Positions 39,331-43,792 of a stretch of DNA of 64,000 nucleotides are shown piece by piece. Below the pieces are notes generated by a model. That model was not told where the DNA came from. It saw only the letters and a program-made list of their open reading frames with translations, and searched no databases. The translations under genes were made by a program, and so were the position numbers. The stretch's first letter is position 1. Every line of letters begins with the position of its first letter. Source of the stretch: Dimorphilus gyrociliatus (taxonomy: Eukaryota > Animalia > Annelida); contig CAJFCJ010000002.1 in assembly GCA_904063045.1 (NCBI GenBank), positions 1,448,422 through 1,512,421 of the forward strand, written 5' to 3'.

Positions 39331-40637
39331 ATGCCACCTTGTACCTCTAATTCGCCAAGTCACAATCATCTACGTGAAAGAAGTCTAATAGGAATTGATG
39401 GATATTGGTACGATGTTACAGATTTTGTGAGTAGGCATCCAGGTGGCCAGGTGATTGAACATTTCATAGGAAAAGATGCTAGTGAGGTCTTTCATTCATG
39501 GGGTCATAAGAACGTACTAAAACATAGGAAACCTGTCGGTAGTTACACTAAAAAAGCTAAGCATCCTGCCGACGAGGAATTTAGGAAATTAGATATGTTT
39601 TTTCAAGAAAATGGTTTTTACGATACCGATTGGTCTTTTTACAAACGAAAAATTGCTGTGATATTTTTATTATGGATTACGACTTTCTTACTTGTTGAAT
39701 GTGAGCATAAAATGTTTAAATATTCAGCTGGAATAACGCTTTGCGCTTTTTGGCAACAATGTGGTTTTATGATGCATGATTTGATGCATACCCAATTTTT
39801 TAGAACTTTAAACTCGGATAGAATTGCCGGAACCATATTTGGTACTATTGGGTTTGGTATTAGTGCCCATTGGTGGCAAGATGAGCATCGACTTCATCAT
39901 GCCCTAGTAAATACAGCTAATCCAAAAACTGGTTTCGCTGATCCCCAAATGATTGAGGAAGTTTGGGCTCAAAATGAAAAACTATTCTCTTTCTTTAGCA
40001 AACCCCTTCAAAAATACGCTATTTCTATACAACATTTTACATTTATTCCTTTGGTTGCTCTGGCTGGAAGGTTTGCCATTATTCGTGACTCGTACTCGTG
40101 TGAGAAACGACTTTACGAATGGATCGCTATTATTTTACATTGGGCTTGGATAGCTCTACTACTTTCTCGTATGGATACTTGGACGGACAAATTTATCGTT
40201 TATGGTCTCTCTTCTCTTTTGGAAGGAATTCTACATATACAGTTAGTAGTGAGTCATTACGCCAAGCCTTGGCAATACGAAGATCAATATCATGATCGAA
40301 GCTGGTACACCATTCAAGTTGAATCCAATTTAAATATCTCTTGTCCAGTTTGGTTAGATTGGTTTCACGGAGGTAAGAAATTCTTTAATATATATAGATA
40401 TAAATAAATATATATATATACATGAATAATTACTACACAGGACTTAATTTTCACATTGAACACCATCTATATCCAAGGTTGGCAAGGCATAAACTACGAA
40501 AGGCCTCATCAATAATTCTTAAGCTATGCAGGAAACATAAAATTGTATATGATTCAAAACCTTTTCTACAAGCATTATTTGATACTCTGAAGCAACTGAA
40601 ACATGCAAGTAGGCATTATAGCCTAAATGTCAATTGA
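39331..40637 (+). CDS. Cytochrome-b5-fused membrane fatty acid/sphingolipid desaturase (front-end type)
   Basis: N-terminal b5 domain with HPGG; His boxes HDLMH, HRLHH and HIEHH; one intron 40373-40440 joins WFHG to GLNFHIEHHLYP. Confidence 0.92.
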
Positions 40638-40832: not shown

Positions 40833-42088
40833 TTATTCTTTGTAAGTTGTAGGAACAATGCCAAACATTACTATGCAAGTTAAAACCATGGCGGCAGAAA
40901 AGATTGCAAAAAAAGCTAAATCAAGAGTTTCCGTCAGTTTTTTCCATTTAAGTTGATAATATGCATCGTTACTCTTTTCCGTACTTTCAGCTTTTCGGTA
41001 AAAGAGTCTGACGATAATTATAGTACAAATAAGGGATAATCCAGTTAAGACCATTACAATTATAATATATATCGCTAATACTGGTGCATGATCAGAATTT
41101 CTTGGAAGGATGTCATTAAGTACCTGAAAAGGAAAAGTTCCACTTAATAAGGATAAATTGATTTATATAAATATTTTGTTTCTTTTCCATACCAATAGGA
41201 AAACCGTGTAGCTTAACAAAACTGTCATTGATAGAGTGATCCTCTCGCCAACTTCAGGTGGTATGCAAAAAGTGAAAACTGAGACAAATGATAATAAAAC
41301 GCAGGGTAAAACAATGATAAGAATAAAGTATAATGGCTTCCGTTTAATATTTAGAGTTATCTCAACTGAACAGTATTTTGAACCATCAGTTTCGCTTCTA
41401 GTCTTCATAACTTTAGTTGATAATAATTCCCATTCGGAATTATTCTGATATGCTGACAAATCAATGCTTCCATGATCAATCTCGAATTCTACTAATGTGC
41501 ACGTATATGCCCAAGATGTAATGAGTACCTTACAAGTTTGGGTATCGAATGGAAAGAGTTGCATAATAAGAGGACACGTTGTTGTAAAACGTCCTCCCGG
41601 TGTATAAATGACTTCGCCAGTAAAAAAGATTTCTGTTTTAAAATATTTCATAAACTGTTCGTTGTAAAACTCTCTTGCGCTGTTTTCTTGTACTACATCA
41701 GGTAACCAAATATTTAAAGCTGGAATTGTAGTTCGTTTAATCCCACCAAAATTATCTGGATTCCATTGCAGGAATTCATCTGTCCAAGTCTATATTAACA
41801 TTAGTTGAATATTTAAATATATTTATACAAGTGAATATTAATATCAATAGATCAAACCATTGCGTGAAAAGCAAAAAGGCTTAGTCGTTGATTTCTTTCA
41901 TCTATATTTTGAATTTCCGATAATTTTAATTCGTAATTAACGTGAATTGTCCTTGAACTGTTTGTAACAGGTCTTGCTCTTCTATCATAGCCTGCCATCA
42001 AATATCTTATAAGAGACTTTTCAGGTTGACTGGCTATTTTCGTAAGGGCAAACTTGAATAGGATAATCAATACAAAACTTCTGTACAT
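40833..42088 (-). CDS. Divergent cation-type Cys-loop (nAChR-like) subunit, copy A
   Basis: Exons 42088-41858, 41789-41193 and 41123-40833. Signal peptide, YDRRARPV, WLPDV, Cys-loop CPLIMQLFPFDTQTC, RKPLYF, M2 GERITLSMTVLL, short M3-M4 loop, no vicinal loop-C cysteines. Confidence 0.92.
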
Positions 42089-42295
42089 GTTTACTTTATA
42101 GAAAATCTTAAACTTAAATCCTTTTTATAATATTTCTTTGCCCTATCTCTATCTCTGCCTCAAGTTTATAACATGCTCTCCCTAACGTCGTACAATAACT
42201 TTTCAATATTACTTTCAATCACTCTTTTATAGCTTGATACGGTTTTTTATACACTTTTCACCTGGACTTACTGCTGCTAAGTGAATAGTGAATAC

Positions 42296-42335
<40 letters not shown>

Positions 42336-42421
42336 TAGTAATACGCATCTTCCCATCGCCATCTAACCCAGTTTCTAATATATCCTACATGTTTTTATTA
42401 TCCTTACATATTTACGGAAAA

Positions 42422-43792
42422 TTACTTCAATGATGGTCTTATCACTAACAGACCTAAGGTAACAAAAAATAGTAAAGTTAAATAGAAGCAAGCAAACGTC
42501 CTATCTAAAATCCTGCCGATAAGTCGCCAAGATTTTTTCATATCTTCTTCCTTATCGACAAAGGCTCTAGGTTCTATTTTATCCGAGGCGTCAACTCTCA
42601 CCAATCTTCTTAGATAAACAAAAACCAGCACACTTATCCATTTAGGAATCGGTGTTCTTCTATAATGAAATCGTACTACTATTACAGAGCAAACGAGAGA
42701 TGACGCCGTAATAATCATAACCGTCATTATATAGGTGCTAATAAGTGGAATATTATCAGAATTTCTCGGTAGCATCTAAAGAGGTTCATTTTTTTAAAAC
42801 ATAATTTAATCATAAGATTGAAGAGTCTGAGCATAATTTAAAATTAAACGAACGTTTGTAGTGTAAAGAAAAAAAATGAACCTCTGTTAAAACAAGAAGG
42901 AAAACGGAATAGCTTAGAAGAGTTGTCATCGATAGAGATATCTTTTCACCAGTTTCTGCTGGAACGCCAAAAGCCACTATCGATATCATTGATAGTAGAG
43001 AGCAGGGAAGAACAACGTTCCCTACAAAGTAAAGAGGCTTTCTTTTCAAAACAATTTTCACTGTTATTGAACAATAGATTTTCCCGCCATATTCTTGTTT
43101 TTCAAATTTTACATCAGTACTTTTAATTTTCCATTCGGAATTTTCGCTATACGAATCAAGCATAACGGTTTTTTTCACCGGATAGAGCATTACTTCGGAA
43201 CATGTTGGTACCCAACAACCGAATTGAAGGCGACACGTTTGTTCATCGAAGGGAAAATAGGTCATATCAAAGGGGCATGTTGTTATCATTTTTCCAGCCG
43301 GAAGATACGATATTTTCCCTTCATGATCAATCTCTAATCTAAAATATTTCATGTGTTGACCGTTATATAAATCCCTAGCACTATTTAATAGGACAACATC
43401 GGGAATCCAAACGTTATTAGCTGGTACAACGATTCTCTTTAGGTTGGAGAAATTTTTCGGATTCCACTTTAAGAATTCATCATTCCATTCCTACATTCAT
43501 TGTCAATATATTACTATTATTATAGTTCTTAATTGACCAATAAAAACTCCTTACTTACCAAGGTCAGATAGGAAAACGAATGAAACAGCTGATTCTTTTC
43601 GTCGATATGTTGTATTTGGGACAATGATAAAGTGAAGTTAACTTGGATAACTGTAGATATTTTCCGAACAGGTCTTACTCTTCTATCGTAATTTGAGAAG
43701 ATCTTCTCAGCTAGATCCCTTTCGTTCTTTTGGCTGTAAAGTACTAAAAGTAAAGATGATAGGAATATAAAACTAACTATTCCTTTATTCAT
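42422..43792 (-). CDS. Divergent cation-type Cys-loop (nAChR-like) subunit, copy B
   Basis: Exons 43792-43559, 43490-42882 and 42775-42422. YDRRVRPV, WIPDV, Cys-loop CPFDMTYFPFDEQTC, RKPLYF, M2 GEKISLSMTTLL, no vicinal loop-C cysteines. Confidence 0.92.
42780..42885. repeat. Perfect 16-bp inverted repeat at the ends of the 106-nt intron 2 of channel copy B
   Basis: AGAGGTTCATTTTTTT at 42780-42795 and AAAAAAATGAACCTCT at 42870-42885; the intron spans 42776-42881. Confidence 0.85.

What the first reader, a model, noticed from the sequence alone, without database searches (positions are those of the whole stretch)
40833..43792. Tandem minimal Cys-loop receptors without the ACh-binding signature but with a shared extra cysteine pair: candidate chemoreceptors
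Seen in both copies: loop A Tyr replaced (VQENSA, VLLNSA), loop D Trp replaced (F, Y), no vicinal loop-C cysteines or first loop-C Tyr, an M3-M4 loop of only about 25-45 aa, and a cation-type GE(R/K) filter. Both have a Cys at loop-B Trp+4 (SWAYTC, CWVPTC) and right after the last loop-C Tyr (KYCS, IYCS). Established: in alpha7 nAChR the Trp+4 loop-B residue contacts the loop-C backbone in this region, and divergent tandem nAChR-like genes serve as cephalopod chemotactile receptors. Inference: a new disulfide staples loops B and C, creating a non-cholinergic sensory channel family.
Basis: partly seen in the sequence, partly recalled or inferred. Interest (0 to 1): 0.76.

Follow-up and report, generated by a model that had tools for sequence, protein, structure and literature searches.

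The report
Worm nicotinic-like channels with extra cysteine pair
Two neighbouring genes of the tiny marine worm Dimorphilus gyrociliatus encode small nicotinic-receptor-like ion-channel subunits from a seven-gene family seen only in this worm and one close relative, marked by an extra cysteine pair that probably bonds two ligand-binding loops; nothing shows they are chemoreceptors.

Summary
The interval 40833-43792 (minus strand) contains two intact three-exon genes, A (398 aa) and B (372 aa). Both are nicotinic-type Cys-loop subunits with a cation-type pore. Both lack the loop-A Tyr, the first loop-C Tyr, the vicinal cysteines and the loop-D Trp, and both have very short M3-M4 loops.

The extra cysteines align exactly with human alpha1 G153 (loop B) and L199 (loop C). 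Published molecular-dynamics modelling has these two residues backbone hydrogen-bonded.

The pair occurs in seven genes of this genome and in six proteins from one unidentified close relative, one of which lacks the loop-C region. It is invariant there and absent from about 230 other receptor sequences examined. Carriers form one well-supported clade (98/95).

A loop B-loop C disulfide is therefore likely (about 0.75), but I could not measure it because the structure tool returns no coordinates. The chemoreceptor idea has no support: the family is small, appears to keep matching copies in the relative, and shows no specific link to cephalopod chemotactile receptors.

The public annotation (DgyrCDS1261) fuses the two genes, which I read as an artefact. 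Other notes of this scan describe non-alpha nicotinic-like genes elsewhere in this genome; none mentions this cysteine pair.

This is a new variant of a known kind, of moderate interest.

The parts
43559..43792 (-). Gene A exon 1: start codon, signal-peptide-like N-terminus, N-terminal helix, beta1 and loop D (78 aa)
   Evidence: Pfam PF02931 E 1.4e-9; GTAAGT donor; identical to residues 1-78 of public protein P0151
42882..43490 (-). Gene A exon 2: loops A, E, Cys-loop, B, F, C, then M1 and M2 (203 aa)
   Evidence: PF02931 E 4.9e-36 and PF02932; nAChR alpha4 E 4e-40; AlphaFold2 pLDDT 91.4 with nAChR chains as best fold matches
42422..42775 (-). Gene A exon 3: M2-M3 linker, M3, short intracellular loop, M4, stop codon (117 aa)
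   Evidence: PF02932 E 4e-10; ORF; TTTAG acceptor
43200..43202 (-). Gene A Cys97 codon (loop B, Trp+4; equivalent to alpha1 G153 and alpha4 Lys)
   Evidence: Sequence; alignment to alpha4; invariant in the clade
43071..43073 (-). Gene A Cys140 codon (directly after the last loop-C Tyr; equivalent to alpha1 L199)
   Evidence: Sequence; alignment; invariant in the clade
42089..42421 (-). Intergenic spacer between A and B, with AATAAA at 42399-42394 (23 nt after A's stop codon) and a (TA)n run near 42295-42333
   Evidence: Read directly. The public model splices across this spacer
41858..42088 (-). Gene B exon 1: own start codon and signal-peptide-like N-terminus, through loop D (77 aa)
   Evidence: PF02931 E 1.8e-9; 40% identical to A exon 1
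41193..41789 (-). Gene B exon 2: ligand-binding loops, M1 and M2 (199 aa)
   Evidence: PF02931 E 1.4e-35; human alpha1 E 3e-39; 51% identical to A exon 2
40833..41123 (-). Gene B exon 3: M3, an intracellular loop of about 22-25 aa, M4, stop codon (96 aa)
   Evidence: PF02932 E 2.5e-7; identical to residues 647-742 of P0151
41499..41501 (-). Gene B Cys97 codon (loop B, Trp+4; aligned to human alpha1 G153)
41370..41372 (-). Gene B Cys140 codon (aligned to human alpha1 L199)

Best explanation
These are two separate, intact genes of Dimorphilus gyrociliatus. Each encodes a compact subunit (398 and 372 aa) of a pentameric cation channel of the nicotinic type. They belong to a seven-gene clade found so far only in this worm and one close relative.

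In this clade the pore and the coupling elements are canonical: the FPFD Cys-loop, a -1' Glu, Leu9' and an acidic 20' residue. The principal face of the binding site has been rebuilt. The loop-A Tyr, the first loop-C Tyr and the vicinal cysteines are gone. The residues at the alpha1 K145 and D200 positions, a charged pair implicated in nAChR gating, are mostly replaced. Two invariant cysteines sit where alpha1 has G153 and L199.

Most likely (inferred, about 0.75) these cysteines form an intrasubunit disulfide. It would tie the base of loop C (strand beta10) to loop B, replacing the non-covalent contacts that normally couple these loops.

My best guess for function (inferred, about 0.45) is an orphan ligand-gated cation channel whose agonist is not acetylcholine. 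Where the genes are expressed is unknown.
For: Gene structure and family membership. The organism and the fused public model come from exact look-ups.

Seven genes in this genome carry the pair, out of 38 receptor loci examined. Carriers from the second species are P0001, P0010, P0013, P0078, P0153 and P0185.

The carriers form a single clade with support 98/95, so one change of state explains the pair. None of about 230 other segments has both cysteines.

Both cysteines are invariant even where the loop-B Trp has become Phe or Tyr. Every member has four core cysteines in the extracellular part of exon 2.

The cysteines align exactly to alpha1 G153 and L199. In molecular dynamics the G153 backbone O bonds the L199 backbone N, the S153 side chain bonds the L199 N, and double mutants show functional cross-talk (PMC7956382).

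The K145 equivalent is lost in 8 of 9 clade rows and the D200 equivalent in 9 of 9. PMC3536520 describes that charged pair as implicated in starting gating.

The model of A exon 2 has pLDDT 91.4 and an nAChR fold.
Against: No coordinates were available, so the S-S distance is unmeasured.

In the cited simulations a Ser153/Thr199 double mutant showed no side chain to side chain hydrogen bond, so side-chain geometry is not guaranteed.

All carriers are one clade, so the co-occurrence reflects a single evolutionary event, not repeated covariation.

Gene A and its counterpart in the relative carry a fifth cysteine at Trp-1, which allows other pairings.

There are no expression or ligand data. The loop-B Trp and the last loop-C Tyr are retained, so a cholinergic or choline-like agonist is not excluded.
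Confidence: 0.55

Rival explanations
1. These are partner (non-alpha, structural or complementary) subunits that assemble with alpha-type subunits encoded elsewhere in the genome into ordinary acetylcholine-gated channels. The cysteine pair would only stabilise a principal face that no longer binds ligand.
For: All seven members lack the YxCC motif, while many alpha-type genes exist in the same genome. Vertebrate non-alpha subunits also keep the loop-B Trp (own knowledge). The loop-D position is still aromatic (Tyr in A, Phe in B; Trp in the Dg1008 branch). An earlier follow-up on another non-alpha trio in this genome reached the same reading.
Against: The clade has no alpha-type sister. Strict conservation of the Cys pair, the loop-B Trp and the last loop-C Tyr suggests the principal face is still under constraint. 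Loop C keeps the full alpha-type length.
Confidence: 0.3
2. One reading: a sensory chemoreceptor family analogous to cephalopod chemotactile receptors, detecting environmental molecules.
For: The parallels with what is published about the cephalopod receptors are general: descent from nAChRs, a conserved cation pore and a diverged ligand pocket (review PMC11526382). Some members lie in tandem. Between gene A and its counterpart in the relative, 7 of the 8 loop-C tip positions differ against 18 of 195 elsewhere (Fisher p 1.4e-6).
Against: There are only 7 genes, and counterparts in the relative are 77-88% identical over the regions compared (80% over the whole protein for one pair). The loop-C enrichment is not seen for B and its counterpart (3 of 8 positions, p 0.38). 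No link to cephalopod receptors was found: CRT1 is not in the best 60 solved-structure hits of exon 2 and ranks 28th for exon 1. No expression data are available.
Confidence: 0.12
3. A and B form one gene encoding a natural two-subunit concatemer, as in the public model DgyrCDS1261 (742 aa).
For: The public annotation joins them through a canonical GT..AG intron at 42453-42034. The topology is formally possible, because M4 ends outside the cell (own knowledge).
Against: That intron is 420 nt against 68-106 nt for the four real ones. It removes A's last 9 codons and stop, an AATAAA 23 nt after that stop, and B's start codon and signal peptide. Single-subunit paralogues and a 399-aa product on a 1398-bp contig, which leaves no room for introns and so probably comes from a transcript, end and begin where A and B do. 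The join leaves only about 5 residues between M4 and B's N-terminal helix, too short to span the extracellular domain (inference). Multi-domain fusions are common among public models of tandem nAChR genes.
Confidence: 0.07

Closest known systems
Nicotinic acetylcholine receptor subunits (alpha4, alpha1, beta2, alpha7; e.g. PDB 5KXI, 9GU0)
   Same: Same fold and domain order. Exon 2 is 33-36% identical to them in the fold search. Shared features are the Cys-loop with FPFD, a GEK/GER -1' Glu, Leu9', an acidic 20' residue, the loop-B Trp and the last loop-C Tyr.
   Different: No vicinal cysteines, no loop-A Tyr, no first loop-C Tyr, and no loop-D Trp in A and B. The K145 and D200 equivalents are replaced. 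The intracellular loop is about 22-50 aa by my count, against about 105 unmodelled residues in Alpo4. There are extra cysteines at the G153 and L199 positions.
Human muscle alpha1 G153-L199 contact (G153S slow-channel myasthenia; PMC7956382)
   Same: Exactly the two positions that carry the cysteines here. Modelling has them hydrogen-bonded, and double mutants interact functionally.
   Different: In alpha1 the contact is a backbone hydrogen bond. Here it would be a covalent bond, in a receptor without the acetylcholine signature.
Cephalopod chemotactile receptors (CRT1, PDB 9E6B)
   Same: An nAChR-derived cation channel with a conserved pore and a diverged ligand pocket (PMC11526382).
   Different: A separate lineage. 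CRT1 is not among the best 60 solved-structure matches of exon 2. The worm clade's nearest relatives are annelid, bivalve and nemertean proteins. Sensory expression and hydrophobic agonists are shown for the cephalopod receptors but are unknown here. The primary papers were not held, so I could not check whether those receptors have a similar cysteine pair.
Alpo4, orphan nAChR-like receptor of the annelid Alvinella pompejana (PMC10338036)
   Same: An annelid nAChR-like subunit that lacks the vicinal disulfide and remains an orphan after extensive ligand screening.
   Different: Alpo4 keeps the aromatic residues (F103, W159, Y199, Y205, W65) and has an intracellular domain of about 105 residues. 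The paper describes no loop B-loop C cysteine pair.
Second disulfide within loop C of glycine receptors and GluCl (own knowledge)
   Same: An extra disulfide that stiffens loop C in a Cys-loop receptor.
   Different: There both cysteines lie within the loop-C hairpin. Here one lies in loop B and one at the start of beta10, and the family is cationic and nicotinic-type.

Membership tests
Cys-loop pentameric ligand-gated ion channels (Pfam PF02931 + PF02932) | Ligand-binding domain and transmembrane-region profiles both matched above the curated cut-offs | tested here: met
   All six exons match. The exon 2 pieces score 124.6 and 123.1 bits for PF02931 (cut-off 26) and also match PF02932.
Cys-loop pentameric ligand-gated ion channels (Pfam PF02931 + PF02932) | Two cysteines 13 residues apart enclosing the FPFD motif | tested here: met
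   Cys72 and Cys86 of exon 2 in both genes, invariant across 103 aligned sequences.
Cys-loop pentameric ligand-gated ion channels (Pfam PF02931 + PF02932) | Four transmembrane helices M1-M4 | tested here: met
   The model has helices at 152-175 and 181-202 of exon 2. Exon 3 matches PF02932 and aligns through M3 and M4 with full-length paralogues.
Cation-selective nicotinic / 5-HT3 branch | Closest solved relatives are nAChR subunits; -1' Glu (GEK/GER); no Pro-Ala-Arg anion motif; Leu9' | tested here: met
   Best solved-structure hits are alpha4, alpha6, beta2 and alpha1 at E about 1e-40. The M2 alignment shows these residues.
Alpha-type acetylcholine-binding nAChR subunit | Vicinal cysteine pair at the tip of loop C (YxCC) | tested here: not met
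   The aligned positions are Tyr-Gly in A and Glu-Thr in B, and no clade member has CC.
Alpha-type acetylcholine-binding nAChR subunit | Aromatic box: loop-A Tyr, loop-B Trp, both loop-C Tyr, loop-D Trp | tested here: not met
   Only the loop-B Trp and the last loop-C Tyr are kept. Loop A is Leu or Glu, the first loop-C Tyr is Gln or Arg, and loop D is Tyr or Phe.
Cephalopod chemotactile receptors | Common descent with the cephalopod receptor clade | tested here: inconclusive
   No cephalopod receptor sequence could be placed in the tree. CRT1 is absent from the best 60 solved-structure hits of exon 2 and ranks 28th for exon 1. The nearest relatives are annelid, bivalve and nemertean proteins.
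Cephalopod chemotactile receptors | Expression in peripheral sensory cells and gating by environmental, poorly soluble molecules | not testable with these tools
Proposed clade: loop B-loop C stapled nAChR-like subunits | Cysteines at both the Trp+4 (alpha1 G153) and Tyr+1 (alpha1 L199) positions | tested here: met
   Present in A, B and five other genes of this genome, and in five proteins of a related species. A sixth, P0101, covers loop B only and has that cysteine. Absent from about 230 others.
Proposed clade: loop B-loop C stapled nAChR-like subunits | The two cysteines are actually disulfide-bonded | not testable with these tools
   Structure prediction returns no coordinates. Support is indirect, from homology to the G153-L199 contact and from invariance.

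The most novel reading that the evidence does not exclude
A natural covalent staple between loop B and the base of loop C defines a new, dinophilid-restricted class of nicotinic-derived cation channels. In it the usual non-covalent loop B / beta7 / beta10 couplings (the G153-L199 hydrogen bond and the K145-D200 charged pair) have been replaced by a disulfide, and the receptor answers to a ligand other than acetylcholine, possibly an environmental one.
Probability: 0.3. Interest if true: 0.7.

Novelty: new variant of a known kind. Interest (0 to 1): 0.45.

Why it matters
Residue 153 of loop B and its contact with loop C are well studied in nicotinic receptors. They influence nicotine affinity, and the G153S change causes slow-channel myasthenia. 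A receptor lineage that has fixed a probable disulfide at exactly this contact, while dropping the neighbouring K145/D200 pair, is a natural experiment on how loop-C movement is coupled to gating. It also offers a compact (372-398 aa), short-loop subunit that may suit structural work.

There is a practical result too. The public gene model DgyrCDS1261 should probably be split into two genes. The family adds to the list of orphan lophotrochozoan nicotinic-like receptors.

It does not by itself reveal a new sensory system.

Tried and rejected
- **Spliced proteins not searched.** The joined proteins of A and B have no reference, so they were not sent to any search, fold or look-up tool. All searches went exon by exon. 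Joins were made only inside local scripts, for one paralogue in the tree.
- **The look-up of encoding contigs was closed.** I therefore could not identify the second species, confirm that its A-like and B-like ORFs share a contig, obtain DNA for dN/dS, or look for transcripts.
- **No coordinates from structure prediction,** and no model file appears in /data. The S-S distance was not measured, and no pentamer can be folded.
- **Primary cephalopod-receptor papers not held** (Allard 2023, Kang 2023, van Giesen 2020). A residue-level comparison with those receptors was not possible.
- **Literature searches found nothing relevant.** There was no report of a natural loop B-loop C disulfide and no paper mentioning DgyrCDS identifiers. 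The Alpo4 paper's supplements do not list these proteins.
- **The word-index search is leaky.** One search failed to return some of its own query rows, so I rest the restricted-distribution claim mainly on the exhaustive HMMER search, and only on its best 150 of 11,227 hits.
- **Pseudogene reading rejected.** Both genes have intact frames and canonical splice sites, and counterparts in the relative are 77-88% identical over the exon 2 regions compared.
- **Anion channel reading rejected.** GEK/GER is present and there is no PAR motif.
Full report
**What is in the interval.** On the minus strand, 40833-43792 holds two head-to-tail genes of three exons each. Gene A is 43792-43559, 43490-42882 and 42775-42422, giving 398 aa. 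Gene B is 42088-41858, 41789-41193 and 41123-40833, giving 372 aa. All four introns are GT..AG, and they are 68, 106, 68 and 69 nt long. Every exon matches the Cys-loop receptor profiles PF02931 and/or PF02932. The two large exons reach E 4.9e-36 and 1.4e-35. The best solved relatives are nicotinic subunits: alpha4, alpha6, beta2 and alpha1 for A at E about 4e-40, and human alpha1 and alpha7 for B. An AlphaFold2 model of A's exon 2, built with a 103-sequence alignment, has mean pLDDT 91.4. Its best fold matches are nAChR alpha3, alpha1 and alpha4 chains. A and B are 51% identical over exon 2, 40% over exon 1 and 49% over M3, so the duplication is old.

**Organism and annotation.** An exact look-up identifies the source as the miniature annelid Dimorphilus gyrociliatus. 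This agrees with earlier notes of this scan. The assembly is 77.9 Mb and the window lies on contig C2. The public protein DgyrCDS1261 (CAD5112007, 742 aa) is residues 1-389 of A joined to B from residue 21 onward. All internal splice sites equal mine. The join uses a 420-nt GT..AG "intron" at 42453-42034. That intron removes A's last nine codons and stop codon, and an AATAAA 23 nt after that stop. It also removes a (TA)n run and B's own start codon and signal peptide.

Single-subunit paralogues begin and end where A and B do, and so does a 399-aa product on a 1398-bp contig. That contig leaves no room for introns, so it probably comes from a transcript. I therefore read the fusion as an annotation artefact (about 0.9), though I could not check RNA data. 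Many top hits from other lophotrochozoans are similar multi-domain fusions.

The residue-level alignments confirm every item:

| Position (alpha1 numbering) | Gene A | Gene B |
|---|---|---|
| Loop A, Tyr93 | Leu | Glu |
| Loop C, first Tyr (Y190) | Gln | Arg |
| Loop C, vicinal Cys (C192-C193) | Tyr-Gly | Glu-Thr |
| Loop C, last Tyr (Y198) | Tyr (kept) | Tyr (kept) |
| Loop D, Trp55 | Tyr | Phe |
| Pore entrance | GEK | GER |

- The loop-D residue is read from the exon 1 ends, five residues before the conserved WxD Trp.
- Both pores also have Leu9' and an acidic 20' residue, so the pore is a canonical cation pore.
- By my count from the exon 3 translations, the M3-M4 loop is about 50 aa in A, which keeps an MX-like PKW segment, and about 22-25 aa in B.
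- Both genes have Cys at Trp+4 (residue 97 of exon 2) and directly after the last loop-C Tyr (residue 140).

**How widespread the cysteine pair is.** Searching the whole assembly with exon 2 and inspecting 38 receptor loci shows the pair in seven genes:
- A and B in this window.
- DgyrCDS1008 (C2, 385 kb).
- DgyrCDS1833 and its tandem neighbour (C2, 4.031-4.033 Mb).
- DgyrCDS13097 (C23).
- An unnamed gene on C5 (1.134 Mb).

None of the other loci has the pair, including the next most similar one (C2, 700 kb).

An exhaustive HMMER search of 1.84 billion representatives gave 11,227 hits. Among the best 150, only proteins from Logan assemblies of an unidentified close relative carry the pair. These are P0001 (88% identical to A), P0010, P0013 and P0078. 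P0101 is a fragment that covers loop B only and has that cysteine. Word-index searches added P0153 and P0185. P0185 is 77% identical to B, carries the pair, and has the same longest-contig length (24,937 bp) as P0001. That suggests, without proving, that the tandem layout is conserved.

A careful maximum-likelihood tree of 62 exon-2-equivalent segments puts all 12 carriers in one starred clade (98/95), and one change of state suffices. Inside it, A groups with DgyrCDS13097 (100/96) and B with the other five genes (100/98). The neighbours therefore belong to the two oldest branches of the family.

The nearest outgroups all lack the pair, and their placement is weakly supported. They are unnamed ENA and Logan products, bivalve proteins (Sinanodonta, Mactra), and Owenia and Capitella proteins.

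**Is it a disulfide?** This is shown only indirectly.
- Both cysteines are invariant in every clade alignment. The loop-B Trp itself is Phe in DgyrCDS13097 and Tyr in P0078, and identity across the clade falls to 36-51%.
- Every member has four core cysteines in the extracellular part of exon 2: the Cys-loop pair plus this pair. A few have one extra.
- In the alignment of B to human alpha1, the cysteines fall exactly on G153 and L199.
- PMC7956382 reports from molecular dynamics that the G153 backbone O hydrogen-bonds the L199 backbone N. In the myasthenia mutant the Ser153 side chain bonds the L199 N, and double mutants at 153/199 interact functionally.
- PMC3536520 summarises the related proposal that residue 153 interacts with the loop-C backbone.

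I also found that the residues at the alpha1 K145 and D200 positions are lost. PMC3536520 describes that charged pair as implicated in starting gating. The Lys is lost in 8 of 9 clade rows and the Asp in 9 of 9, replaced by Ser or Thr. Among 194 other segments, Lys and Asp are the commonest residues at these positions. A covalent 153-199 link replacing these non-covalent contacts is a coherent picture.

There are caveats. I had no coordinates, so no distance. The carriers are one clade, so the co-occurrence is one event. In the cited simulations Ser153 and Thr199 side chains did not bond each other. I put the disulfide at about 0.75.

**Function.** The conserved pore and coupling elements argue for working channel subunits. 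What gates them is open.

For a changed ligand: three of the five aromatic-box residues are gone. Loop A often carries Glu. One branch has even replaced the cation-pi Trp. Loop C keeps the full alpha-type length with a hypervariable tip. Between A and P0001, 7 of the 8 tip positions differ against 18 of 195 elsewhere (p 1.4e-6). The same test for B against P0185 is not significant (3 of 8, p 0.38).

Against over-reading this: such losses are also typical of non-alpha partner subunits, and many alpha-type genes exist in this genome. An earlier follow-up on another non-alpha trio in this genome favoured the partner reading.

For the chemoreceptor idea I found no specific support. The family has seven genes with apparently matching copies in the relative. 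No tie to cephalopod chemotactile receptors appears, and expression could not be examined.

My odds are:
- Orphan channel with a non-acetylcholine agonist: 0.45. Within this, sensory use is about 0.12.
- Partner subunit of acetylcholine-gated heteromers: 0.30.
- Still cholinergic or choline-gated on its own: 0.10.
- Other: 0.15.

**Novelty.** The genes are in the public annotation, fused and uncharacterised. The Alpo4 study used Dimorphilus nAChR sequences in a tree but says nothing about this clade or the pair. Full-text searches found no natural loop B-loop C disulfide in a pentameric channel. I class this as a new variant of a known kind.

**Limits.** The primary papers on cephalopod chemotactile receptors were not held. 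Only the best 150 of 11,227 homologues could be inspected, so independent occurrences of the pair elsewhere cannot be excluded.

Noticed in passing
window 42034-42453: The public model DgyrCDS1261 (742 aa) fuses genes A and B through a 420-nt GT..AG intron. That intron skips A's stop codon, an AATAAA signal, and B's start codon and signal peptide. The model should probably be split into two genes.
   Followed up: partly
window 42776-42881 versus 41124-41192: The second intron sits 12 nt (4 codons) further downstream in A than in B. A's exon 2 ends after LVLTE. B's ends after FLL, and its exon 3 starts with VLND. The public model agrees with both positions.
   Followed up: partly
window about 42295-42333: A (TA)n microsatellite lies in the 333-nt spacer between the two genes.
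   Followed up: no
window 39331-40637 (+): Immediately downstream of B, on the opposite strand, is a gene whose ORFs carry a cytochrome-b5-type HPGG motif and desaturase-type His boxes, split by one short intron. Another first-reader note covers it.
   Followed up: no
G000:C2:4030954-4033433 (loci L009, L015, L018, L020): A second tandem pair of the same clade (DgyrCDS1833 and its neighbour). In the neighbour, the large exon is split near the codons aligned to exon-2 residue 112 by an extra 60-nt phase-2 intron; the DgyrCDS1833 match breaks at about the same place. The two genes are sisters in the tree (93/90).
   Followed up: partly
L004 (G000:C23:798058-798663) and protein P0078: One branch of the clade has replaced the loop-B cation-pi Trp with Phe (DgyrCDS13097) or Tyr (P0078). 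P0078 also has Phe in place of the last loop-C Tyr. Both extra cysteines are kept.
   Followed up: partly
proteins P0002-P0009, P0011, P0012, P0014, P0015 and others: Many top hits from other lophotrochozoans and a hemichordate are 670-1215 aa long with 2-5 receptor-domain stretches. Tandem nicotinic-like genes seem to be fused often by automatic annotation.
   Followed up: no
proteins P0057 and P0069: Multi-domain receptor-like proteins with a cysteine near loop-B Trp+4 but no cysteine at the loop-C partner position. This may be a different pairing or a free thiol.
   Followed up: no
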